A program made the translations under genes and the position numbers. Source: Glycera tridactyla (lineage: Eukaryota). From it: DNA of 64,000 nucleotides. Shown one piece after another: positions 1 to 56,499 of the stretch. Where the stretch lies: the NCBI GenBank assembly GCA_965644265.1, contig OZ286460.1, positions 95,604,001-95,668,000 of the forward strand, written 5' to 3'. Every line of letters begins with the position of its first letter. Position 1 is the stretch's first letter. The notes under the pieces are model-generated. The model was not told the DNA's origin. It saw only the letters and a list, made by a program, of their open reading frames with translations, and made no database searches.

Positions 1-184
1 GTGCATTACGACGACGACGACGACGGCGGCGACGACGACGATGCCCTGGAGCCTTCTACACTGACAGTACATGAATTTAATACCCTGGAACCTACTGCAT
101 CGAGGCGTGCAAAAAAACAAGCTCGACGCCGCGACGTTCAACCGACGTCGCACGACAAAAATCCAATACGTTACATCACACGAC

Positions 185-335
185 AACATTCCAATACATT
201 AGCATAGACTCTGCATGAATGCAGTACATCGCACGACAAATCCAATACATTAGCATAGACTCTGCATGAATGCAATACATCGCACGACAAATCCAATACA
301 TTAGCATAGATTCTGCATGAATGCAATACATCTTG
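185..335. repeat. 51-bp tandem repeat, about 3 copies
   Basis: Unit CGCACGACAAATCCAATACATTAGCATAGACTCTGCATGAATGCAATACAT recurs at 230 and 281; shows as a 17-aa periodicity in ORF 171..377. Confidence 0.9.
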
Positions 336-900
336 CCGGACGACAGACCCAGGCGGGTTAGTGGTAGAGAATGACAAGGGCAGCGATCACACAGAACGTC
401 CTCTTCGGGCATTTTTACAAACGTACCGTCACTTGAGAATACCTGAGATCGCTGCAGTCTGTAACATAGGGAAGGTATTTCGAACCTGCAGTGTAAGATG
501 CATCGCCTAATTGGTGCACAGGACAACTTCAAAAAAGCTTGATGCGACGCTATTTGACGAGGACGACATCACAAGACAAAACCAACACATTAGCATGGAC
601 TCTGCATGAATGCAATACATCTTGCCGGACGACAGACCCAGGCGGGTTAGTGGTAGAGAATGACAAGGGCAGCGATCACACAGAACGTCCTGTTCGGGAA
701 TTTTTACAAACGTACCGTCACTTGAGAATACCTGAGATCGCTGCAGTCTGTAACATAGGGAAGGTATTTCGAACCTGCAGTGTAAGATGCATCGCCTAAT
801 TGGTGCACAGGACAACTTCAAAAAAGCTTGATGCGACGCTATTTGACGAGGACGACATCACAAGACAAAACCAACACCTTAGCATGGACTCTGCATGAAT
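300..900. repeat. 289-bp near-identical tandem duplication
   Basis: ATACATCTTGCCGGACGACAGACCCAGGCGGG... starts at 326 and again at 615; ORFs 176..532 and 507..821 are near-identical. Confidence 0.9.
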
Positions 901-999
901 GCAATTCATCGGCCTAAACTGCGCACCATGCAATACGTCTTGCCGACTATCTGGAGGGGGGGGGGGATCTCATCGAGTGCGCACTCTGGTTTACTGCGA

Positions 1000-2170
1000 C
1001 CCCTTATCGCGAAGACAGTACTTTGAACTTGCAGTATGCCGTGTGCCTGCATAGTACATGAATTTGACACCCTGGAACCTGCTGCATTTAAGGGTGAAAA
1101 ACAGTGGGACAGCGAAATATCAGTGTGCGAGCTTGGCGTATACACCCTGGTTTACTACATTCCCTAGCGTGAAGACAGTATTTCGAACCTTCAATGTGCC
1201 GTGTGCCTACACAGCACATGATTTGATACCCCTTGAACCTGCCGCATTTGAGGGCGAAGATAAAAGTACTCAAGGGTGAAGATAATGGGACAGCAAAATA
1301 TCGCTGTGCGAGCTCAGCGTATGCACTCTGGTTTACCTACATTCCGTAGCGTGAAGACAGTATTTCGAACCTGCAATGCGCCGTGTGCCTGCACAGCACA
1401 TGAATTTGATACCCTGGAACCTTCTGCATTCAAGGGTGAAGATAATGAGACAGCAAAATAATAGTGTGCGAGGGTGGCGTACACACTCTGGCTTACTACA
1501 TTTCGTAGTGTGGAGGCAGTATTTTGAACCTATAATGTGTCGTGTGCCTGCACAGTACCTGAATTCGATACCCCGGAATCTGCCGCATTTAAGGGCGAAG
1601 ATAAAGAGACGGCAAAAAACTACTGGTGAGTGTGCATCGGTGTGACTATAGCGTGCGTACTCTGAATCACTACATTCTATAGCGTGAAGACAGTACTTCG
1701 AACCTGCAATGCGCCTCGTGCCCGCACAGTACATGAATTTGATACCCTGGAACCTGCCGCATTTAAGGGCGAAGATAAAGACACGGCAAAACTACTGGTG
1801 ACTGTAGCGTGCATACTCTGAATCACTACATTCTGTAGCGTGAGGACAATATTTCGAACCTGCACAGTACATGAATTTGATACCCTGGAACCTGCTGCAT
1901 TTAAGGGCGAAGATAAAGAGACGACAAAACTACTAGTGAGTGTGCATCGGTGTGACTGTAGCGTGCATACTCTGATCACTACATTCTGTAGCGTGAAGAC
2001 AGCATTTCGAACCTGCAACATGCCTGCGCAGTGCATGAATTTGATACCCTGGAACCTGCTGCATTCAAGGGCGAAGATAATGAGACGACAAAACTACTAG
2101 TGAGTATGCATCGGGGTGACTGCAGCGTGCATAACCTGAATCACTACATTCTACGGCGTGAAGACAGTAC
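1000..2170. repeat. Diverged satellite array, about 7 units of 140-180 bp
   Basis: Core CAGTACATGAATTTGATACCCTGGAACCTGCTGCATTTAAGGGCGAAGATAA recurs near 1055, 1215, 1396, 1555, 1729, 1867 and 2033, with a related copy near 65. Confidence 0.9.
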
Positions 2171-2267
2171 TACAGTATGCCATGTAACTACACAGAAGAT
2201 CTGGACGGCACAACTGTAGTCCACCTCGCACGAATGAACTGCCAGAAGTGGAGACAGACAGATGGAC

Positions 2268-3146
2268 ATATTTGTTCAAATCGATCGTTCTCAGGACCTC
2301 CCGAGATCGACCTTCTCAAAAAATCTACCTTCATTCAAGCTTACCCCTTCCTACAAAGCAAAAGGAATTAACTTGAATCAGATAGTATCATTGTGTATTG
2401 ATTGATCGTTCCAAAAAATATGCCAATCTTTCATATCATTACATCTATCCCTAACGAGGGACGTATTCACAGTTTTGATTGAGCTGTCCATCTCTCTCTT
2501 TATCCATTTCTAACGTGTTTCTGTTCTCTGCATAACAGATATTTGAAACCGACGGACGCGTTTGCAATTCTGATCATTCAAATTTTTTCGAAAAACCCAT
2601 TTATAGATGCGAGATTATCGAATAAAGAAATTTCGCGTATCCAGGTGACAAACGTATCTGCCCGGTCTGTCTGACCGGTTCGCTCCCATCTATCGGTTAA
2701 ATTTCGGATGATTGATTGCCGGTTAAAAAATATAGATGGCGATTAATCGAACCCGGTCGAAATCGTCCTCTCAACGGACCTATACGAGATCTTTGCGACT
2801 GTCGCTTCCCTGAATCCGTCTACTTAAGATTTTGCGTGATCAGAATGACAGAAGACCATCACCGAATCCAAAGCGGTAAACGTTTCGAGTAGAAAGGAGC
2901 CACTAATCGAGATGAAGGGGCATATAGTTTAAACTATTCTGTGACTAAATCTATCATTTGGGTGAACATGTGGTGGTATGAAAAGCTGGTATATTTTTCT
3001 GACTCTCCAATCATTTTACAATGGTACTATGTGATTCAAGTTAATTTGTTCCCTTTCAGAGTTGGGACATAGTCTTGGGTGCTGTACCTAATTTTTTGGA
3101 GAGGTCGACCTCGGGGGGTCCCGAGGACGACCGATTTAACAAATAT
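2268..3146. repeat. ~880-bp imperfect palindrome at the left terminus
   Basis: ATATTTGTTCAAATCGATCGTTCTCAGGACCTCCCGAGATCGACC (2268) matches the reverse complement of GGTCGACCTCGGGGGGTCCCGAGGACGACCGATTTAACAAATAT (to 3146). Further pairs: AATTAACTTGAATC (~2367) with GATTCAAGTTAATT (~3033), and CCATCTAT (2686) with ATAGATGG (2732). Centre about 2707-2712. Confidence 0.9.
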
Positions 3147-3298
3147 ATCAATTGCCTCTGACTGCACCCAAACAGATTATTGTTGTACTACGGCGTCAAT
3201 ATCTCATGCGGCGAAAATACAGACTGGCGTGGCAATTTAGTACTGTTCGATCGGAGCAACACTACAAGACGAGCTCGATTCTGAGCTGCAGCCTGTCA

Positions 3299-3646
3299 CT
3301 AGCTGAGCAAATCAGCAAAGACATTGTGTGAGGTCCCACAAACCACTTCCAGCCCCTGTACATGTTGGCGTTCTAGACAATCTCTCTCGAGCAACATAAG
3401 TAAGCAAAAACGAACTCTAGGAGGCACCATGACCCATATGATGAATGCGATGAAGGACAACATGTCTTCAACAGTGTGCTCCAGTTCATTTTTTACGTAG
3501 TAATAATCGAAGACGGCTCGCGAAAAAAGCGCCATGCCCTGTATTACGAGTTTAATAAACGAGAATATGTTTTCGTTGGGTTGCTCCAGTTTCATTCTTA
3601 ACCCACAACTGGCCCCAAATCGTCCCACATACAAAGCGCGGATCAA
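3299..3646 (-). CDS. Possible small ORF with a hydrophobic segment, inside the pPolB element
   Basis: 115 codons from a TTG (first ATG about 17 codons in), co-oriented with pPolB, containing MLSFIAFIIWVMV; no homology recognised. Confidence 0.2.
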   Translation of the reverse strand: MIRALYVGRFGASCGLRMKLEQPNENIFSFIKLVIQGMALFSRAVFDYYYVKNELEHTVEDMLSFIAFIIWVMVPPRVRFCLLMLLERDCLERQHVQGLEVVCGTSHNVFADLLS

Positions 3647-3848
3647 TGTTCATCTCAAGTACAGGACAGCTGCCTGCTGTTATTGTACACATCTCAATAT
3701 AGAACACCTACTCGGAAAAAGCATGCTGGCGTTCTCGATACAAGGCAACACACTCCCGCCCCAACTCTCTTCCAGCTGCGAATTAGAATCCAACTGAAGC
3801 AAAATACGACAATGGACGACTGCCGCAAGTGAAATGACAAACAATTCA

Positions 3849-4335
3849 CAGCAAAAGCGACAAATATGGATGGACGGACGGACGGACGAGTGAACGAGAG
3901 ACGGACGGACGGATGAGTGAACGAGAGACGGACGGACGGACGGATGAGTGAACGAGAGGCGGACGGACTGACGGATGAGTGAACGAGAGACGGAAGGACG
4001 GACGGGTGAGTGAACGAGAGATGGACGGACAGACATGTCAACAATAATTCAGTACAGAGATTGTCGTATACTCACACGTGGTCACTGTATCTGGACGGTA
4101 AGTCACAGCAAAAGCGACAAATATGGATGGACGGACGAGTGAACGAGAGACGGACGGACGGACGGATGAGTGAACGAGAGACGGACGGACTGACGGATGA
4201 GTGAACGAGAGACGGAAGGACGGACGGGTGAGTGAACGAGAGATGGACGGACAGACATGTCAACAATAATTCAGTACAGAGATTGTCGTATACTCACACG
4301 TGGTCACTGTATCTGGACGGTAAGTCACAGCAAAA
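3849..4335. repeat. Left subterminal (GGAC)n array with embedded GAGTGAACGAGAGA motif, in a ~240-bp tandem duplication
   Basis: CAGCAAAAGCGACAAATATGGATGGACGGACG... at 3849 and 4106, with a partial third start at 4328; about 9 copies of GAGTGAACGAGA. Confidence 0.9.
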
Positions 4336-4787
4336 CCGCCAACATACACAGCATTTGCAGATAATGTTTCTGCATTCATATAAGGTGGTGCATCTTCTGG
4401 ACAACTGATTATGAAAGAGGCGAGGGTGACAAAACAATAGCACCAAGGTGACATGGGACACATATCTCCCCAAACCATGATTGCTGTACACTGAACGCCG
4501 GCCTCTGGAGGAATGCTTGCAATGCCTGACAGGTATATAATTAGCTTACAAGAAAGACAACACACCGGTGAAGACTTGATTTCTGCCTGCTGCTGCCTAT
4601 ATGGAACAGCTTAATTGCAACCCATGCCGCCCGCTTCACCTGACTGAATGTAGGTGTATGGTCAGCTGAATAACAATATGATTGGTTATGGTAGATACCA
4701 ACTTAGTATATTGTATTTATGCAATAACTACAAACTAGATGATGCACATCAAACAGCGGTTCATGACTCTGGCACTAATTTAGAGCA

Positions 4788-7700
4788 CTACCCCCTGAAT
4801 CCGAACGGCACAGTAGACCCATCCAGTAGCACAACTCGTTTGTCAACTGTGAAATGATATTTCTTGCTGAATTTCCTATCTGTAACCACCGACAAAGTTT
4901 TCTTATCCCTACGAATCTGCTTCTGAGGCACCTCTACAGCAAAATCACAACCGGCTCCATCTCTCAAATATGACTTTGTCATTTCTTTCATTGTATTAAA
5001 ATTAAGAATTTTATCAGCAGCATGTGTGACGGAAAACCCTTTATATTTCAAAACGGTCTCTTTGTTTGACAACCTATATGCATAGCTTTTAGAGCCTGTG
5101 CACACAAACTCTTCAATGGATGTGCCGTCCGGTATCTCTGATGTGAGATTCCCTAAAAAGGGACCGTGTGATGGAGTATACTCCCCATCATTTGCGGTGT
5201 ACATCAAGCTATCTGTGTCGGTGTACAAAAGACGTTCACGGAGCTGTTCCATTTCCTCTAATAATTCGAGCCTACCGTATGCTGTTACAAATGCAGCAAA
5301 GACAACGTTGTTTGCCATCCCTGCCTCAATCATTGCTCTCATGTCAGAATACTCTAACATCAGTACCTCATCTGAAATAATATTAAAATCTTTCAACTTG
5401 ATACGAGGATCTGTCAATTTTGTTATCAACTCATGGGGATTGGCTGATGTCACAAACGTGGTCTGCCTCTTATCTAGACGTTCCGAGAATTTTCCAAAAA
5501 TGGCGTTAAGCAGAACCTTTGCAACATTTCTTTTGGAACTATTGTTTTTTATTTTATTGGGATCTAATTCTACACCTTCATGTGCCAAATAATCTCGACA
5601 ATAGTTCTCTTTCTCTTCATCTGTGACACAATCGAGGGGATATCCACCACTCTCAGTCTTCACCTTCAGCATTTCATTCACATACTTGGAAAAATAATTT
5701 ACAAATTTATCATCAAACGGATCAATTGTATTACGTGTTGTATGTTTATAGTGATAGGTTTCTATGATACGCTTTATCCTATACCTTCTCTTTAATGCTT
5801 GCTGTAATTCTGGGGTCACAAATGTTCCTCTGATCATTCTGTCCTCGTCACCACATTCACAAACATCCTTCTGATTGTTCATCTCAGCACACGTCCTGCA
5901 CAACGTAAATACCAATTTGCCTCTTGCCTTTGATGGAAGGACGGGAAAGAAAAGGTCAGTTGGAGGAAGCACTTCACATTTCACCAAGCCAAATACCTCG
6001 TTGATATCCCCAAAATTGCGCACCCTTATTTCCGGATGGAAACATGGGAACTCCTTATTTTTTTGAACATACGGATAGAGGCTACAGAAATCTGAATATA
6101 GCACCTTCTCCCCTTCAGGAGCAGTATCTCCCGACCAGAGCAACTTTACACATTCTACGCGTCCACCCATAAAGGCATCTCGAGGATCCATAGGCTCATC
6201 AATCTGTAATGTATTATGTATGATTTTGGCATCTTCGTCACCTTCCATTAAAGCCTGAAATTCATGCTCCCAAATGGTGACAACCTTGATACCTAATGAG
6301 CTTAAGTCATTTAAATACATCTGAGAAGAAGCATACATTTCATCAAATGATTTGCCTGTTTTCTTACATTTAATATCGCGGCGACCAGAAGGATAGCATT
6401 TCAGACAAGCATGCCAAAGGCATCCAAAGAAATTGTATATGACAGCAGATGCTGGGGGTGGGCAAGAAACACACTCATTCACATCAGGCTCAGAGTTACC
6501 TGCACCAGGATAATACCCATCAACATGAAACAATTTCCCATCATAACGTCTGATAGTGACCTCTTGCTTATTCCCCGCGTGTAATATTCGAATACTCTCT
6601 TTTTTTGAGATATATTCCAGCCAGGAACAACATTTCTTACTATACAATTTATCATACGAACGATAGCCATCAGCTGGTGTTATTCCAAAAAAAGTTTTTT
6701 CAAATGTCTCTTTAACAACTTCCAATGTTGGAGATGTATTTGCTGGCACCATTCCACACCCCAGATCAACGTTCAGTGCTCCATCTCTCCTAACAGCTTG
6801 GACATCGGCTACAGCAGACGTGTTCTTGTCTCTCACCTTACAGGTGAGAATCTCTGACACATGTTTCTTCCTGAATATCTTCATTGCTAATGAAGCAATA
6901 GTGAAGCATTCACGGAATGGATGCATGCCAGAAAGATCAAATATGATTTTATCAAATGCGATTACAGCCTTCCTCAATATCACTGTATCATTCGTACAAT
7001 ATGAGATGAGCTCGTGCTTAAAATTGAACTTCTGCCCACTCTCCCGTTTTGACTGAATCCATTGATGAAATACTGTCACTTGTGCAGGTTTCATTGTGTC
7101 AACACAATAATCGGCCTCTGGGGGATACGCCCCTTCATAGCCATATTGTGTATGAGCGAGTGTATTGAATAAATGCGGAAAATACCCCTTACACAGTTCG
7201 CCATCAATCTCAGATGTAAGCTCAAACATAGATGGCAACTTCGCTAATGGAACAGGTAAAAACCGTGCCGAATCTATTATTCTTATTTGATGACCAATTT
7301 TCACAAAAAGTAGTTGTCCACCATTCACTACTGTCTTATGAACTTTAACTCTTGATGTTAGCAGTTGACGTAAGACAAAATACTGATCAAACCTACTGCC
7401 ATTATGACTAACAACAGTTGCATATGAATGAAACGCCGAATACATCCACTCGCAAAACTCGGATAAACATGTCAGGCCAAAGAACACACGTCTCCTTCTA
7501 CCACATTTGCTGTTGCGACAATATGGACTTTTGTAGTCATGTATGCCACTGCCCTTCCTATTCCTAACTCTGCAGACAGCACACCTATCGCCACAATGAC
7601 TACAAAATTCTGTCGTGGAAAATGAAGTTTCCTGGCAGAACTTACACCATTTATCGGCAACAACCAAGTTAGGCTGATGGATATAACTTCCACACTTAGC

Positions 7701-9593
7701 ACTTCCACACCTGGTACACTTAACACACTTTGCACATGGATATTCCTGAATGAGACACTTTTGACACCTGTCAGGAGGCGTATACTTATCGTAGCATTGA
7801 TATAATTCATCCTGACAAGTCTCAATATCGAAAGCAATGTATAAAGATATATCATTCTTGCTTGTTGTTCCCTTACGACGGGATTTAATGGACCTAATGT
7901 AACACTGGTGGCGACCTACAACATGCTTCGCACATCTCTTACAAAAGTGTTCTCCGCATTTGTGATCATCTTTCGACCTTGTTTTAGTGTTAACTAACCT
8001 CTTACAATATGGACATAACCATGAATGGGAACACAGAGTATACTGGTACTTCTTGCCTCTCTGTCTTTTATGTTCTTCATAACAAAAAGAACAGGCACAC
8101 AACTTATTACACTCACCACACACAACAGCTGAATCCGGATGAGCACGCCTTTCTGAGAAACATTTCGTGCTCGAACATATGGAACATTTTTTACTACATC
8201 TATGGGTGACCTCCTTCTGACAAGAAGTCTGACAAACATCACAAAAAAAACCATCACCAAATAAACCTTGCGGATTGGTCACGGCATCGTAATGAAAACC
8301 ACCTGATTCAGTCTTCATGTGGAAAACATGAACCAATGTTTCTGCAGAGTGGCGAGTGGCATCGCTGGGAAGTCGCAGCATAGTGTCATGATCAGTAGTT
8401 GATATCACATATACCCCTATGCCTAATGCATCTTCTATCCTATCAATGTCTCCTATTTCAACTGAATACCCATCGTCAAACTTGCACATATTCATAATGA
8501 TTCTGCAACCTGCATTCTGCTCACCTCGAGATGATTTTGTTAGATCTGTATATAATGAATCAGAAAAGCATCTATTCTCTATAGCAATGTCAATCCGTCG
8601 TCTGCCCTCAATGTGGCCATACAACGTCTTCCACTCATTATTCCTAATTTTGGCATGAAATGCCCAAGAAACAAGAATAGCCCGTACAAGACACAGATTA
8701 TCATCGTTATAAATAACGACCATGCTCCTCTTCCTCATCCTATCATTATTCTCGCCTTCTAGGTGCATAAGAGGAAACCTAGCACCTCCTTGGACACGAT
8801 TAATGACCTGCACTTGGATCCTCAACGTAGCATCAGCTTTGAGGCCTCTTTTTGACTGGGAGACGGCTTCTATCCTATCTAAAATAGATTGAGGGGTTAC
8901 ATTCCCTAATTCCTGTAATGGAACTACAACAGGAGAATCAAGTTCGGCCTGATGAATAACCACCCTGAACAACGAGTCTGACCTTGCTTCCTCTCTAATT
9001 GAACCAATAACAATATCGAATAAACGTAGCAAAGTTGAAGATAGATCTGTTAGCAATGGAGCTGATTCTAAAAACATGGAATTAAGAAATACTTCAAAAT
9101 CAACACTCATTCCACGATTATTCAAAAAATTTCTAACATTCACCCTACGAATAGTGAATTCAGGATCAACTCTGGAAACTGCTGATAGAGATAAATCTCT
9201 TCCATCGGAATCACGTTGTATAGGAAAGTCAGATATCTCACCATCAGGACTCGCAATTGGCGGATTAGGAGAAGGATGCGCGGAATCATTGTTACGTGAA
9301 CGTTGGCCCATAGATGGCAATGGAGGCTCCCCTCTAGCGCTAGGACGTTGACCGTTGTCTCCTTCTACTGAACGATCTAGAATCTGGTGCGTTCTTCCAT
9401 CGCTGGTACCCGGCTGGGGGTCGTCATGATGTGCCCCCTGTCTCTGGTCGCTTCCATCTCCCTGATTGGGGACACTATGATCGTGCTTACGATGCCGCCC
9501 CTTCTTACCACGCTTCCCAAATCCGACCTGCTCACTCTGAAATGATAAATCATCATCATCGTCATGTAATTGAATGAAAACAATCCTGAACAA
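4788..9593 (-). CDS. Protein-primed family-B DNA polymerase (Polinton/Maverick type) with putative terminal protein, OTU-like protease, Cys-rich regions and VSR-like nuclease insertion
   Basis: 1601 codons with no stop. ExoI FDIET, ExoII HNGSRFD, DSARFLP, KGYFPHLFN, ExoIII YCTND, DPRDAFMGGRVE, motif A DFCSLYP, motif B KVLLNAIFGKF, motif C YTDTDS. The ORF opens at TTG, so the true start may be a spliced upstream exon. Confidence 0.96.
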   Translation of the reverse strand: MFRIVFIQLHDDDDDLSFQSEQVGFGKRGKKGRHRKHDHSVPNQGDGSDQRQGAHHDDPQPGTSDGRTHQILDRSVEGDNGQRPSARGEPPLPSMGQRSRNNDSAHPSPNPPIASPDGEISDFPIQRDSDGRDLSLSAVSRVDPEFTIRRVNVRNFLNNRGMSVDFEVFLNSMFLESAPLLTDLSSTLLRLFDIVIGSIREEARSDSLFRVVIHQAELDSPVVVPLQELGNVTPQSILDRIEAVSQSKRGLKADATLRIQVQVINRVQGGARFPLMHLEGENNDRMRKRSMVVIYNDDNLCLVRAILVSWAFHAKIRNNEWKTLYGHIEGRRRIDIAIENRCFSDSLYTDLTKSSRGEQNAGCRIIMNMCKFDDGYSVEIGDIDRIEDALGIGVYVISTTDHDTMLRLPSDATRHSAETLVHVFHMKTESGGFHYDAVTNPQGLFGDGFFCDVCQTSCQKEVTHRCSKKCSICSSTKCFSERRAHPDSAVVCGECNKLCACSFCYEEHKRQRGKKYQYTLCSHSWLCPYCKRLVNTKTRSKDDHKCGEHFCKRCAKHVVGRHQCYIRSIKSRRKGTTSKNDISLYIAFDIETCQDELYQCYDKYTPPDRCQKCLIQEYPCAKCVKCTRCGSAKCGSYIHQPNLVVADKWCKFCQETSFSTTEFCSHCGDRCAVCRVRNRKGSGIHDYKSPYCRNSKCGRRRRVFFGLTCLSEFCEWMYSAFHSYATVVSHNGSRFDQYFVLRQLLTSRVKVHKTVVNGGQLLFVKIGHQIRIIDSARFLPVPLAKLPSMFELTSEIDGELCKGYFPHLFNTLAHTQYGYEGAYPPEADYCVDTMKPAQVTVFHQWIQSKRESGQKFNFKHELISYCTNDTVILRKAVIAFDKIIFDLSGMHPFRECFTIASLAMKIFRKKHVSEILTCKVRDKNTSAVADVQAVRRDGALNVDLGCGMVPANTSPTLEVVKETFEKTFFGITPADGYRSYDKLYSKKCCSWLEYISKKESIRILHAGNKQEVTIRRYDGKLFHVDGYYPGAGNSEPDVNECVSCPPPASAVIYNFFGCLWHACLKCYPSGRRDIKCKKTGKSFDEMYASSQMYLNDLSSLGIKVVTIWEHEFQALMEGDEDAKIIHNTLQIDEPMDPRDAFMGGRVECVKLLWSGDTAPEGEKVLYSDFCSLYPYVQKNKEFPCFHPEIRVRNFGDINEVFGLVKCEVLPPTDLFFPVLPSKARGKLVFTLCRTCAEMNNQKDVCECGDEDRMIRGTFVTPELQQALKRRYRIKRIIETYHYKHTTRNTIDPFDDKFVNYFSKYVNEMLKVKTESGGYPLDCVTDEEKENYCRDYLAHEGVELDPNKIKNNSSKRNVAKVLLNAIFGKFSERLDKRQTTFVTSANPHELITKLTDPRIKLKDFNIISDEVLMLEYSDMRAMIEAGMANNVVFAAFVTAYGRLELLEEMEQLRERLLYTDTDSLMYTANDGEYTPSHGPFLGNLTSEIPDGTSIEEFVCTGSKSYAYRLSNKETVLKYKGFSVTHAADKILNFNTMKEMTKSYLRDGAGCDFAVEVPQKQIRRDKKTLSVVTDRKFSKKYHFTVDKRVVLLDGSTVPFGFRG

Positions 9594-9886
9594 GATACAC
9601 TAGGCTTCGCAGCATATGTAATACCAACTGCCGATCATGACACCGCGCCACATCTCCCGGCGATGCCACTCTGCGAAAAGATTAATCCATGTTTTTCGCA
9701 TATAAAGGTGGCCCAGCTAGTTCCATTTTGATGCCGTGACGAATCTACAAGACTATAGTTTTCCTTTGACATTCCAAGTTCTTGTCAAAAACGGTCACCC
9801 ATTTGCAGTAATGAAAACATTTCTTCCTTCCAACACATCCCGATATCACATCTCCCCAAACCGATACTGCCTTTATCACGTCATCA

Positions 9887-10462
9887 TTACATCACTGAAC
9901 TCACCTTCCTGGCACGCCGCTCCGCCAGTGAAGATTTCACTTTAGCAGATGGGGATGGATGCTCACCAAACAGACCATAATAAAACGACAACAAACGTTC
10001 GACAGGAAGAGATTCCGAGATCTCAACAAGCTCCCCTGTGCCGTCACAATCGCGTATTCTCTCCAATGCTCGAGAAGACATATCCCCCTCTACAAGCTGA
10101 GGCAGTTCCTCCGCTGTCATAGACGCAGCCATTTGATTGTAGTAATCTATCAAACTCCGCTGAACGCCTTCATCCGACAGAAGAGATGGATCCTCGGCCA
10201 ACAGCGATTCCGCAGTTTCACCAGGGAGAAACCTAGCAATCCCCCTCGCACTCATCACAGTTTGCCGTTGTTCCGGTTGCAGCTGCTTCAAAACCTCCAA
10301 AAAACTCTCTCTCCACCACTCACTACAAGAAATTCGATGATTACTAGCCACCATTGAGCATAGAAAACGGCCAAAAGAGCTGCACAAATGGTAATCACTC
10401 GATACCATTGATATTTTCATAAGCATGTAAACAATATCAGAGGGCTGTACAAAACTTCCCAT
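9887..10462 (-). CDS. Hypothetical 191-aa protein of the pPolB element
   Basis: ATG-initiated, normal amino-acid composition, co-oriented and directly upstream of pPolB; no recognised family. Confidence 0.6.
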   Translation of the reverse strand: MGSFVQPSDIVYMLMKISMVSSDYHLCSSFGRFLCSMVASNHRISCSEWWRESFLEVLKQLQPEQRQTVMSARGIARFLPGETAESLLAEDPSLLSDEGVQRSLIDYYNQMAASMTAEELPQLVEGDMSSRALERIRDCDGTGELVEISESLPVERLLSFYYGLFGEHPSPSAKVKSSLAERRARKVSSVM

Positions 10463-52642: not shown

Positions 52643-52776
52643 AACTAGGAAACCAGAAACATACAATCTACCATGGCGATATCACATAAAACGTGGAGAT
52701 CACTCGTTATGTGTCTGCATATCCACGTCTTATGTGATATCGCCATGGTAGATTGTATGTTTCTGGTTTCCTAGTT
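52643..52776. repeat. Near-perfect hairpin (55-bp arms, 24-nt loop), MITE-like
   Basis: AACTAGGAAACCAGAAACATACAATCTACCATGGCGATATCACATAAAACGTGGA and its reverse complement with 1 mismatch. Confidence 0.92.
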
Positions 52777-52890
52777 ATCTGATTGAGAGCACACCATCCT
52801 TCTGTGGCATTTGAATGGTGAAGAACCAGAACAAAAAGGGTAGAAATATGTGATGAACCCGGATTGGATCATTCCAATATCAGTGACATT

Positions 52891-52974
52891 ATATCGGTGG
52901 CTCAGCGCAATACTAGCCAACTTACTATACATCAAGTAGGGAGTTAGCCTTGTATTGCGCTAAGCCAGCGATAT
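52891..52974. repeat. Short imperfect palindromic element
   Basis: ATATCGGTGGCTCAGCGCAATAC pairs with GTATTGCGCTAAGCCAGCGATAT (2 mismatches). Confidence 0.8.
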
Positions 52975-54177
52975 CATAGTAATCAAAGATCATAGTAATA
53001 TTGATACAGCAGAGAAAGTAATATGAGTCATTGTGGTATTATCAAATGATAATACGATAATGATAATAATGATAACAATATTAGCAGTAATAATCGTGGA
53101 ATCCAACAGTGTTTCAGAAAGCTGACGACAATCATTTGAGTGGTGAGGGTAATAGAAAGGATCGATGCAACCAATTATTTAATTATCAACACATATACTA
53201 GTCAAGTCGGTGGTTGCAACCAAGTTGACGGCAACACCATCAAGAATCAGTATTACCTCAGCTCCATATATCCAAGAGGCAAAGTTCCAGAATTTCTCAT
53301 TAAATTCTTGTCTATGCTATATTAGACTCATTTGGCCAAGTGACAGTCACTGGTGTGCACCTCTTGCAGATGTTGAATGGATGAATGAATGAATGAATGG
53401 ATAGATGTACGGAACAATTTCGTCGTTCTCATCCCCCATGGATACTCTAAGATGGTGCGGGAAGAATTATAATATGAATCACAACAGGCAAACATATCCA
53501 CGTATATGCAAAAACTAAAATAAAAGGGGGGAGGGAAATGTATCGCAATAGATGATGCAGAATTCAGAAGATTTCAGATCTTCATTTAGGACAGTTCAGA
53601 AGGATTTTAGTCGTGTTCAGCTCATCAAATGCGGGTTCAAAAAAAAGATATTCGTGGTAGTTGGGTATTGGAGCAAAGATGAGGGAAACCAGAGAAGAGA
53701 ATGTAGTATTTTTTGGAGTCAAGGGACATGAGAATTCAGAGGACATGCGAGGATGCATCATTTGATGGACCACCGTACCAATAATGACAGTAATTATGTC
53801 CTGAAGACAAACAAGTCGGACTTGAAAATACTCGAGACGGTTTCAGTAATTCACATTATGACGGGAGGTTTAGGTATTCGCGTCCTGGTAGTCAAATCTG
53901 CCTTTTGATATCTCGATCTCACATCTCGGATTGCTGACATTGAATTAGGTGCAGAATCTGGTAGTCGAACCTATGCACATGGAACCATAGATACAATTCT
54001 TTCAGAGAAACAACGGCAGTCCAACAACTTATGATTTCTCTCAGTGCCCTTTTTCGCTGGGACACCTCGAACATCAGGATATTACAATGCTGATCGTGAG
54101 TAGGTAAGACTTTCATCAACTTTTCATAGGTGGACACTCTACCTTACTGATCGCATCCATAGTTTGGACCATTCGTG

Positions 54178-55858: not shown

Positions 55859-56499
55859 AGTCCCGTTAGGACCAGAGCAGGATGCAACAGTATCCGATGC
55901 ATATAGTAGCACTTTTCTGTCATGAACACGTATTAGCTAAGTGATGTTACGCGCCATGAGTATGTCGATTACACATTCTCCCATGACAGAGCCATTCTCA
56001 GTGCGAGATAGGGGTGCACTCTTGACCTTAATCTCACACTGGGTGGTGGGACTACGGAAATGAATGCCATGTCGCAGGTGAATCATTGTCACGTCACAAT
56101 CACTGGATGAAACCAAGGTTACTGCCTATCATGACGTCATCAAGCGTCGGACAGGACGCTGAGATGAGAATGCCGGTCGTATGTGCGGGAATTCAAGGTT
56201 CGTTTCTTGCAGTCTTTTCGGTCCCAATCATTGATGATCATCGAAATACATCGAGAAATGTCATGCGAGAAAAGTAAGAACACATTGGCGTGTGAGATCC
56301 GCATTAAGGATTAGAAAGCACAAGGGCGATCTCACTCGCCAATGTGTTCTCACTATATTCTACCCCGGGAGGTCAGACAAGAAGGTATTGAAATGATTGG
56401 TGTAGAGCCGTGAAAGGGTGACAAAACGCAGAATGACGCCGGCATCATTTCGCATTTTGGCATCATTTCGCGTCTCTACATGGGAGATGACATGTCTTT

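What the first reader, a model, noticed from the sequence alone, without database searches (positions are those of the whole stretch)
2268..3146. ~880-bp imperfect palindrome at the left end with a conserved central hairpin
Seen: arms 2268-2700 and 2715-3146 are reverse complements, best conserved at the outer ends. The core stem is CCGGTTCG..CCATCTAT/ATAGATGG..CGAACCCGG around a ~38-nt loop containing CGGTTAAA twice. The same core occurs flipped at 12907-12971. Established: palindromic telomeres prime rolling-hairpin replication (parvoviruses) or are resolved by nucleases (poxviruses, linear plasmids), whereas pPolB elements normally use protein priming. Inference: the ends may be hairpin origins or resolution sites, or the palindrome is a head-to-head junction between two related element ends.
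Basis: partly seen in the sequence, partly recalled or inferred. Interest (0 to 1): 0.8.

Follow-up and report, generated by a model that had tools for sequence, protein, structure and literature searches.

The report
Decayed foldback end of pPolB element
The 890-bp imperfect palindrome is real. It is most likely the old, decayed left terminal repeat of a stripped-down virus-like transposon remnant that keeps only an intact DNA polymerase gene, and nothing shows that it works as a hairpin replication origin.

Summary
The palindrome exists at 2262-3152, centred near 2707. The arms are 63% identical overall and 70-78% in the outer 190 nt. The alignment score lies 11.9 SD above shuffles, and the DNA fold z-score is -6.5.

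The inner arm plus the central core (2663-3055) recurs as a mirror image at 12983-12593 (74% identical; core 85%). A 31-nt satellite also flanks the gene on both sides, on opposite strands (3868-4342 and 12086-12316). An intact 1601-aa protein-primed polymerase ORF (4788-9593, minus strand) therefore sits in a ~10.7-kb unit with modular mirrored ends. No integrase or capsid gene was found anywhere in the window.

The right end keeps the core, its asymmetry, and about 40 nt of the outer arm. The palindromic tip therefore predates the duplication of the two ends and is not a chance junction.

The arms are old (K2P 0.33-0.42). The core stems show no compensatory change, and the "flipped" copy is simply the orientation expected of an inverted repeat.

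The closest complete relatives are canonical Maverick/Polinton elements with 180-bp perfect TIRs, a 6-bp target duplication and no terminal palindrome. A more distant lineage does carry foldbacks and a covarying subterminal hairpin.

No other copies could be retrieved, so an independent foldback transposon is not excluded. Interest is moderate to low.

The parts
2262..2707 (+). Outer arm (L) of the palindrome, same orientation as the distal arm D
   Evidence: Pairs with 3152-2792. It is the most divergent of the three arm copies: nhmmer bits are L-R 76-86, L-D 43-46 and R-D 137-177.
2663..2741 (.). Central core: an 8-bp stem (CCATCTAT / ATAGATGG), a 38-nt asymmetric loop, and an outer 8-9-bp stem
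   Evidence: It is 85% identical to the reverse complement of 12905-12983.
2708..3152 (-). Inner arm (R) of the palindrome; the left terminal-repeat partner of the distal arm
   Evidence: 2663-3046 matches 12983-12602 at 73% over 387 nt. nhmmer E 1e-41 to 1e-53. K2P 0.33, ts/tv 2.45.
3868..4342 (+). Left array of the 31-nt satellite (GGAC-rich unit)
   Evidence: TRF period 31, 12.4 copies. It is an inverted match to 12086-12316. The motif is found nowhere else in the window.
4788..9593 (-). [quoted passage not shown]
   Evidence: PF03175, E 1.9e-40. A single unbroken tblastn alignment to residues 163-1598 of a 1599-aa relative. The family profile hits phi29 polymerase 1xhx and OTU1 3by4. No stops or frameshifts (0 breaks).
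9591..9750 (+). Short inverted fragment of a second, diverged pPolB copy, abutting the 5' end of the long ORF
   Evidence: About 54% aa identity to residues 387-442 of the long ORF. DNA inverted repeat 8267-8434 / 9751-9592.
9887..10462 (-). 191-aa ORF of unknown function, on the same strand as pPolB
   Evidence: No Pfam or NCBIfam hit. No relative in any fetched locus.
10774..11754 (-). 326-aa ORF with an acidic tract, function unknown
   Evidence: No significant family hit. Only weak similarity to pPolB residues 473-531 (E 5e-4 pairwise).
12086..12316 (-). Right array of the same 31-nt satellite, on the opposite strand
12490..12904 (+). Distal arm (D), a mirror copy of R. Homology is secure from 12587 and weak for 12490-12586.
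12905..12983 (-). Right-end copy of the core, including about 40 nt that correspond to the innermost part of the L arm. Homology stops at 12983.
   Evidence: nhmmer pairs L positions 401-444 with 12984-12941 (E 0.0012).

Best explanation
The palindrome is the left terminal repeat of a ~10.7-kb unit (2262-12983) derived from a Maverick/Polinton-type element. The unit has kept an intact protein-primed polymerase gene and has none of the other element genes.

The terminal repeat is modular. From the outside in, it has a palindromic tip (the core), a ~440-bp arm, a non-homologous spacer and a 31-nt satellite array. All of these are mirrored on the two sides of the gene.

The repeat unit itself was a foldback (outer arm, tip, inner arm) before the two ends were duplicated from each other. 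The left end still has both arms. The right end has the inner arm, the tip and only about 40 nt of the outer arm.

Shown here: the anatomy, the mirror relation, and the branching order ((R,D),L).

Inferred: these repeats were the end-recognition sequences of a linear, protein-primed, integrase-mobilised replicon. A tip that can snap back on a displaced single strand may have helped end recognition or end repair.

Today the structure is a decayed relic. Arms of 63% identity cannot extrude a stable cruciform, and nothing indicates that it acts as a hairpin primer or a resolution site.
For: Arm and core family: there are exactly three arm copies in 64 kb, and all are on the flanks of pPolB.

Satellite: its motif occurs only in the two flanking arrays, on opposite strands and in mirrored order.

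Mirror relation: the right core matches the left core at 85% as a reverse complement and 53% in direct orientation; for the loop alone the figures are 84% and 45%. The 6-8-nt bulge lies on the inner-arm side at both ends. This rules out head-to-tail tandem junctions.

Right end: it retains about 40 nt of the outer-arm side of the tip.

Branching order: R-D is the closest pair (137-177 bits; K2P 0.33, transition-biased, 9 gap columns). L is the outgroup (K2P 0.42 to both R and D).

Polymerase lineage: it is the Maverick/Polinton lineage. L002 and L027 carry rve integrase, 177-187-bp TIRs at 99% and, in L002, a 6-bp target duplication.

Other lineages: a more distant lineage, L024/L026 (~31% aa identity to the window's pPolB), also has pPolB bracketed by inverted repeat arrays and foldbacks, plus a subterminal hairpin with 3 compensated pairs among 3 copies.

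Literature: palindromes at TIR extremities are reported for endogenous virophages and PLVs (bioRxiv 10.64898/2026.07.28.741278).
Against: No target-site duplication was found at 2262/12983, 2663/12983 or 2262/3152.

The two ends are 26% diverged while the 4.8-kb ORF between them has no break. Either the ORF is under selection, or the repeats were never homogenised ends of this gene's element.

No integrase, capsid, ATPase or protease gene is in the window, so mobility of the unit as such is unproven.

The closest complete relatives have short perfect TIRs without any palindrome.

The end modules are CpG-rich (observed/expected 1.25-1.6), whereas the ORF (0.69) and the rest of the window (0.68) are CpG-poor. 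That could mean a separate origin for the end modules.

The window holds other, unrelated foldbacks, so palindromes are common in this genome.

Only one locus is available. No other copy was found in any collection.
Confidence: 0.5

Rival explanations
1. Independent foldback transposon or MITE. The 890-bp palindrome is a complete copy of a non-autonomous foldback family unrelated to pPolB, and 12490-12983 is a truncated second copy. They flank the polymerase gene by chance or by insertion preference in a repeat-rich region.
For: The two arms end together at 2262 and 3152, with the best conservation at the outer ends, as expected for foldback termini. The order ((R,D),L) is what orthologous arms of two copies of a foldback family would give. 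The arms have a CpG content unlike the gene between them. The window contains several other foldbacks.
Against: There is no target duplication at 2262/3152. There is no third copy in 64 kb or in the scanned collections. The second repeat module (the satellite) is also mirrored around the same gene, in the matching order.
Confidence: 0.2
2. Functional hairpin end. The element family replicates or is resolved through snap-back ends. The core is a hairpin primer or a nicking/resolution site, possibly cut by the nuclease-like insert of the polymerase, and the large palindrome is a fossil turn-around or junction intermediate.
For: The palindromic tip is ancestral to both ends and is better conserved (85%) than the arms (73-74%). 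The pPolB carries an insert whose family profile ranks the Vsr endonuclease first in the PDB, and whose confident model (pLDDT 86.7) lists mostly PD-(D/E)XK-type nucleases. A related lineage keeps a covarying subterminal hairpin. Hairpin priming has been proposed for PLV and virophage terminal palindromes.
Against: There are no compensatory changes, and three positions of the outer stem are unpaired at the right end. The core folds are not clearly better than shuffles (z -2.4, -1.6, -1.0). There is one loop orientation per end, as for any TIR. L is older than the R-D split, so it is not a fold-back copy of R. The nuclease assignments are all below significance (E 0.14 by sequence, 0.047 by fold). 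In the published case the palindromes go mainly with elements that do not use pPolB.
Confidence: 0.12
3. Host-level rearrangement. This would be a segmental inverted duplication in satellite-rich chromatin that happened to enclose a polymerase gene (domesticated or relic) and has no mobile-element ends. If transcribed, the inverted arms could act as a source of hairpin RNA.
For: The unit lies between satellite arrays: 1-2171 on the left and a 355-bp tandem repeat from 13132 on the right. Another inverted fragment of a pPolB copy lies at 9591-9750, which shows local inversion-type rearrangement. The ORF is intact although the repeats are old. Relatives exist as polymerase-only loci flanked by microsatellite (L003).
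Against: The mirrored modules are separated by non-homologous spacers of very different length (715 nt against about 173 nt). The palindromic tip sits exactly at the outer limit of homology at the right end, which looks like an end rather than an arbitrary breakpoint.
Confidence: 0.15
4. Assembly artefact, such as a chimeric palindromic read or a collapsed repeat.
For: The window is a gapped scaffold with eight N runs.
Against: Artefactual palindromes are near-perfect, whereas these arms differ at 37% of aligned columns and by many indels. No gap adjoins the structure. A diverged mirror copy exists 10 kb away.
Confidence: 0.03

Closest known systems
Maverick/Polinton elements (polintoviruses)
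   Same: The polymerase has the same lineage and domain order as in relatives that carry rve integrase, TIRs and a 6-bp target duplication. The unit is bounded by inverted repeats several hundred bp long.
   Different: No integrase, capsid, ATPase or protease gene is present. The ends are 74% rather than ~99% identical. There is no target duplication. The terminal repeat is itself a foldback and includes a satellite module.
Terminal palindromes at TIR extremities of endogenous virophages and polinton-like viruses in Halocafeteria (bioRxiv 10.64898/2026.07.28.741278)
   Same: A palindrome sits at the outermost part of each inverted terminal repeat, and that work discusses a hairpin-priming model.
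   Different: Those palindromes are ~52 nt, lie next to target duplications, and occur mostly in elements without pPolB. Here the tip is ~80 nt, extends to 890 bp at one end, and goes with a pPolB.
Foldback (FB-type) transposons and foldback MITEs
   Same: Long imperfect inverted arms with a short centre, the best conservation at the outer ends, and tandem repeats associated with the arms.
   Different: No target duplication and no dispersed copies are demonstrable. Here the symmetry centre, not the outer ends, coincides with the limit of homology at the second copy.
Streptomyces linear plasmid and chromosome telomeres (PMC4513846)
   Same: Packed palindromes at the ends of a replicon that uses terminal-protein priming. 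This shows that the two features are compatible.
   Different: That system is bacterial, with Tpg/Tap proteins rather than pPolB. Its palindromes are short and act on 3' overhangs. There is no sequence relation.
Parvovirus rolling-hairpin ends and poxvirus concatemer junctions
   Same: An inverted-repeat junction with an asymmetric centre.
   Different: Those need near-perfect palindromes, flip/flop isomers and a dedicated nickase or resolvase. None of these is shown here.
pPolB loci L024/L026 (ENA ERZ21788760), an undescribed relative lineage
   Same: The polymerase gene is bracketed by inverted arrays of short tandem repeats and foldbacks, and no integrase was detected within 10 kb.
   Different: The repeat sequences are unrelated. 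Its 76-nt hairpin was seen only on the downstream side of the gene, and it shows covariation, which the window's core does not.

Membership tests
Maverick/Polinton | [quoted passage not shown] | tested here: met
   PF03175, E 1.9e-40. The profile hits phi29 polymerase. The ExoI and PolC motifs are readable in the translation.
Maverick/Polinton | Retrovirus-like (rve) integrase in the element | tested here: not met
   tblastn with the integrases and all other called genes of L001, L002, L024-L026 finds only pPolB in the window. Pfam on the large ORFs finds nothing.
Maverick/Polinton | Capsid, packaging ATPase and protease module | tested here: not met
   Same searches. Sensitivity is limited, because the relatives share only ~35% identity even in the polymerase.
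Maverick/Polinton | Terminal inverted repeats of hundreds of bp | tested here: met
   2663-3046 matches 12983-12602 at 73%, and the satellite arrays are also mirrored. These repeats are far more diverged than in L002/L027, where identity is 99%.
Maverick/Polinton | 5-6-bp target-site duplication | tested here: not met
   The flanks of 2262, 2663, 3152 and 12983 were read, and no matching direct repeat was seen. L002 has CCCGAT on both sides.
Hairpin-ended replicons (parvovirus or poxvirus type) | Terminal sequence folds into a stable hairpin | tested here: inconclusive
   Core folds are -17.1 kcal/mol (left) and -14.6 / -12.1 kcal/mol (right, two strands), with z -2.4, -1.6 and -1.0. The whole palindrome gives z -6.5, but the arms are only 63% identical.
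Hairpin-ended replicons (parvovirus or poxvirus type) | Structure kept by compensatory substitutions | tested here: not met
   17 named pairs on 2 copies give 0 compensatory changes and 3 unpaired cells. With two sequences the power is low.
Hairpin-ended replicons (parvovirus or poxvirus type) | Flip and flop orientations of the loop | not testable with these tools
   There is one copy per end. The relation is the plain mirror image. A population of copies or reads would be needed.
Hairpin-ended replicons (parvovirus or poxvirus type) | Dedicated nickase or resolvase | tested here: inconclusive
   No HUH or resolvase family was found. The pPolB insert is nuclease-like only below significance.
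Foldback transposon / MITE | Long inverted arms with a short centre | tested here: met
Foldback transposon / MITE | Target-site duplication at the outer ends | tested here: not met
   The flanks of 2262-2268 and 3146-3152 share no direct repeat of 3 nt or more.
Foldback transposon / MITE | Many dispersed copies independent of any autonomous element | not testable with these tools
   The source genome is not in the collections: 0 hits in the viral, metagenome and prokaryotic genome scans. There is no extra copy in the window.

The most novel reading that the evidence does not exclude
A so far undescribed class of minimal polymerase-only elements in eukaryotic genomes. Each would be an 8-11-kb unit carrying one giant pPolB (OTU-like domain, zinc-finger region, embedded PD-(D/E)XK/Vsr-like nuclease), bounded by mirrored repeat arrays and foldback tips. 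The polymerase's own nuclease would nick or resolve snap-back ends, combining protein-primed-type polymerase chemistry with hairpin-type ends. The window, L024 and L026 would be three lineages of it.
Probability: 0.07. Interest if true: 0.75.

Novelty: new variant of a known kind. Interest (0 to 1): 0.35.

Why it matters
If the reading is right, the locus shows a Maverick/Polinton-derived polymerase gene that has stayed open for 1601 codons while its terminal repeats decayed by a quarter to a third. That points to selection on a solo viral-type polymerase in a eukaryotic genome. It also adds a pPolB-associated case to the recently reported palindromic tips of polinton-like and virophage terminal repeats, which so far go mainly with other replication genes. 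For annotation, the practical point is that the palindrome should not be called a hairpin telomere or an assembly error. It is a decayed, modular terminal repeat.

Tried and rejected
1. Other copies of the ends. A 17-base arm motif gave 10 viral hits, but these have no further similarity and are chance.

2. The source genome. The window's polymerase is not in the protein collection (best hit 40% identity), so no same-genome copies could be fetched.

3. Complete linear relatives with ends. A profile-based scan of viral contigs gave 9 loci, none with terminal inverted repeats. A single-sequence scan found nothing.

4. Head-to-tail tandem or circle junction. Rejected, because the right junction is the mirror image of the left one and not a translated copy.

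5. L as a recent fold-back copy of R. Rejected, because L is the outgroup to R and D.

6. Host identification. Rfam and tRNA scans of the window found nothing. The closest relatives' assembly accession is not in the paper library, and their protein clusters carry no names.

7. The upstream ORFs (191 aa and 326 aa). They have no family and no relative.

8. Nuclease insert. Pfam on the window's piece finds nothing, phmmer against the PDB finds nothing, and the profile and fold searches are suggestive only.

9. A4 (the pPolB family alignment) was used only as the query. A7 (the window domain plus proteins returned by the search) was used instead.

Full report
OBSERVATION

The window reads as a gapped eukaryote-type scaffold. 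It has eight N runs and satellite arrays over 1-2171, and no tRNA or Rfam family was found.

The reported palindrome is present. blastn pairs 2262-2444 with 3152-2968 (71%, E 4e-17). nhmmer pairs nearly the full arms (E 5e-26). A global alignment of 2200-2707 with the reverse complement of 2708-3215 gives 63% identity. Identity is 70-78% in the outer 190 nt and 54-62% further in, and the score is 11.9 SD above shuffles.

As single-stranded DNA, 2255-3160 folds at -142.9 kcal/mol, against -93.2 +/- 7.7 for shuffles.

There is an 8-bp stem at 2686-2693 / 2732-2739, a 38-nt loop holding CGGTTAAA twice, and an outer stem CCGGTTCG / CGAACCCGG. A second core lies at 12905-12983.

The second copy is much more than the core. 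2663-3046 matches 12983-12602 at 73% over 387 nt, and nhmmer extends this to 2664-3055 / 12983-12593 (E 1e-53). I call the three arm copies L (2262-2707), R (2708-3152) and D (12490-12904).

A 31-nt GGAC-rich satellite at 3868-4342 has its only other occurrence at 12086-12316, on the opposite strand.

Between these modules lies a 1601-codon ORF on the minus strand (4788-9593). It is a protein-primed family B polymerase (PF03175, 1.9e-40) and aligns without interruption to residues 163-1598 of a 1599-aa relative.

From the outside in, both flanks therefore read tip, arm, non-homologous spacer (715 nt on the left, about 173 nt on the right), satellite, and then the gene region.

No integrase, capsid, ATPase or protease was found in the window with the gene sets of five relatives, and Pfam finds nothing on the large ORFs. 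Two further minus-strand ORFs upstream of the polymerase (191 aa and 326 aa) have no family and no relative.

RELATION OF THE THREE ARMS

- R and D are the closest pair: 137-177 bits, 74% identity, K2P 0.33, ts/tv 2.45, and only 9 gap columns.
- L is the outgroup: K2P 0.42 to both R and D, ts/tv below 1, and 32-39 gap columns.
- The similarity is mosaic. In the outermost ~90 nt, L and R agree and D is barely alignable. Next comes a block common to all three, beginning with AATTAACTTGAATC. In the inner ~220 nt, R and D agree and L differs.

The right core is the mirror image of the left one. Identity is 85% as a reverse complement and 53% in direct orientation; for the loop alone it is 84% and 45%. 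A 6-8-nt bulge lies on the inner-arm side at both ends. Beyond the symmetry centre, the right end keeps about 40 nt that correspond to the innermost part of L, and homology then stops at 12983.

Three conclusions follow:

- The two junctions are related by inversion, so they are not head-to-tail tandem or circle junctions.
- The palindromic tip, including part of the opposite arm, already belonged to the repeat unit when the two ends were copied from one another. It is not a chance abutment made twice.
- The L-R split is older than the R-D split, so L is not a recent fold-back copy of R. The simplest history is an ancestral foldback end (outer arm, tip, inner arm) present at both ends, with the right outer arm later lost.

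IS THE HAIRPIN FUNCTIONAL?

I found no positive evidence. The outer stem has three unpaired cells and two one-sided changes at the right end, and no pair shows a change on both sides. RNAalifold prefers a different structure and also finds 0 compensated pairs.

The core folds are marginal: z -2.4 for the left core, and -1.6 and -1.0 for the right. "Flipped" describes only what any inverted terminal repeat shows. With 63% arm identity, the large palindrome cannot be a present-day resolution substrate of the poxvirus type, which requires a near-perfect palindrome (established knowledge).

RELATIVES

The polymerase has no close relative in the protein collection. The best hits are 36-40% identical, unnamed proteins of about 1600 aa. 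Below them come "uncharacterized proteins" of fishes, Nematostella, mayflies and nematodes at 31-34%. The lineage is therefore that of animal-type Mavericks, and the window's host is probably an animal, although I could not name it.

A family profile hits phi29 DNA polymerase (5.9e-8) and, in the N-terminal part, the OTU1 ubiquitin thioesterase (7.7e-4).

The closest complete relatives are L002 and L027, from 1.7-2.0-Mb ENA contigs. They are canonical elements of about 16 kb with rve integrase and about 12 other genes. Their TIRs are 177-187 bp at 99% identity, L002 has the 6-bp duplication CCCGAT, and neither has a terminal palindrome. L002 additionally has unrelated repeat fragments near its ends, one of them with a local 92-nt palindrome. 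L003 and L004 are polymerase-only short contigs without TIRs; in L003 the gene is flanked by (CA)n.

A more distant lineage, L024/L026 (~31% aa identity), gives three copies in one sample and resembles the window's architecture:

- The polymerase is bracketed by inverted arrays of short tandem repeats and by foldbacks. In L024 these lie at 1640-2377 and 9978-10206. In L026 the inverted pairs are 6485-6547 / 14869-14931 and 9577-9636 / 14446-14503.
- The 94%-identical homology between copies ends about 10 nt after a 76-nt hairpin.
- That hairpin has 34 predicted pairs, 3 of them compensated among the three copies, and the same loop orientation in all three.
- It was seen only on the downstream side of the gene.

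So structured, palindromic sequences near the ends of pPolB units do occur, and in one lineage they are conserved. They are not a general trait of the clade, and their sequences are unrelated to the window's.

AGE AND COMPOSITION

The R-D divergence of 0.33 substitutions per site would have destroyed a neutrally evolving 4.8-kb ORF, yet the ORF has no break. Either the polymerase is under purifying selection, or the flanking repeats are older than, and not co-evolving with, the gene.

The end modules are CpG-rich. Observed/expected is 1.25 for the palindrome and for D, 1.57 for 2501-3000 and 1.62 for 12001-12500. The ORF (0.69) and the rest of the window (0.68) are CpG-poor. Nearly all 890-nt windows with a value of 1.1 or more lie in the two end modules. 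CpGs are conserved at least as well as other dinucleotides between R and D: 0.62 against 0.53.

I cannot explain this. It fits unmethylated, possibly promoter-like or protein-bound repeats, but it also fits a separate origin of the ends.

Foldbacks are not rare in this window: a cluster at 19873-22188 and palindromes at 28247-28300, 52643-52776, 52888-52977 and 56273-56354. This lowers the surprise of finding one.

VERDICT

- Best explanation (0.5): a decayed, modular terminal inverted repeat of a Maverick/Polinton-derived, polymerase-only unit, whose repeat unit had an ancestral foldback tip.
- Rivals: an independent foldback transposon present in two copies (0.2), a host-level inverted duplication (0.15), a truly functional hairpin end (0.12), and an assembly artefact (0.03).

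The unit is not a member of Maverick/Polinton in the full sense, because integrase, the morphogenesis genes and the target duplication were tested and not met. It also fails or cannot be tested on the defining features of hairpin-ended replicons. Compared with the published palindromic TIR tips of virophages and PLVs, it is a new variant: a larger palindrome, associated with a pPolB.
Noticed in passing
window 4788-9593 (minus strand): The 1601-codon pPolB ORF is fully open and its catalytic motifs are readable. Yet no other Maverick gene is in the window, and its flanking repeats are 26-37% diverged. This suggests selection on a solo viral-type polymerase. L003 is a comparable polymerase-only locus flanked by (CA)n.
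   Followed up: partly
window 6099-6638 (minus strand; pPolB residues ~986-1165): An insert between the exonuclease and polymerase parts is conserved in all relatives (DG-aromatic, GC-x-W/F-H-x-C and W-E/S-H/C-E motifs). Its family profile ranks Vsr endonuclease chains first in the PDB (E ~0.15). The AF2 model has pLDDT 86.7, and the Foldseek list is enriched in PD-(D/E)XK-type nucleases, none of them significant. JGI names two relatives 'very short patch repair endonuclease'.
   Followed up: partly
window 9591-9750 (+ strand): An inverted fragment of a second, diverged pPolB copy (~54% aa identity to residues 387-442) abuts the 5' end of the long ORF. The locus therefore holds debris of at least two copies.
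   Followed up: partly
window 2001-4400 and 11601-12983: The two end modules (palindrome, satellite, distal arm) are CpG-rich islands (observed/expected 1.1-1.6) in an otherwise CpG-depleted 64 kb (median 0.69). CpGs are not preferentially lost between R and D. This is unexplained.
   Followed up: partly
window 8211-9176 (minus strand; pPolB residues ~140-460): The N-terminal region of the polymerase family matches the OTU1 ubiquitin thioesterase (3by4, E 7.7e-4 with the family profile). It is followed by a Cys-rich, zinc-finger-like stretch (residues ~470-720).
   Followed up: no
window 19873-22188; 28247-28300; 52643-52776; 52888-52977; 56273-56354: Other foldbacks or palindromes unrelated to the pPolB arms. 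The first is a cluster of 140-180-nt units in alternating orientation (91-94% identical). The rest are four simple palindromes of 54-137 nt.
   Followed up: no
window 1-2171 and 13132-13845: The unit is embedded in tandem repeats. On the left are arrays with 51-, 289- and 159-182-bp units. On the right is a 355-bp unit in two 99% identical copies running into the N gap at 13850.
   Followed up: no
L024 11277-11350; L026 16106-16193 and 18718-18793: A 76-nt subterminal hairpin marks the end of homology between three copies of a related pPolB element. It has 3 compensated pairs and a fixed loop orientation. Upstream of it are repeated CTATGGAGGAA-like motifs.
   Followed up: partly
L026 10001-14320 and 20195-24320: Two pPolB copies, 81% identical, lie tail to tail about 6 kb apart with several palindromes between them. 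The second copy is called as two genes.
   Followed up: no
window 10774-11754 (minus strand): The 326-aa ORF shares a short DDPQP-x-TS motif with the N-terminus of the polymerase ORF and has weak similarity to its residues 473-531 (pairwise E 5e-4). It may be a remnant of another copy's N-terminal region.
   Followed up: no
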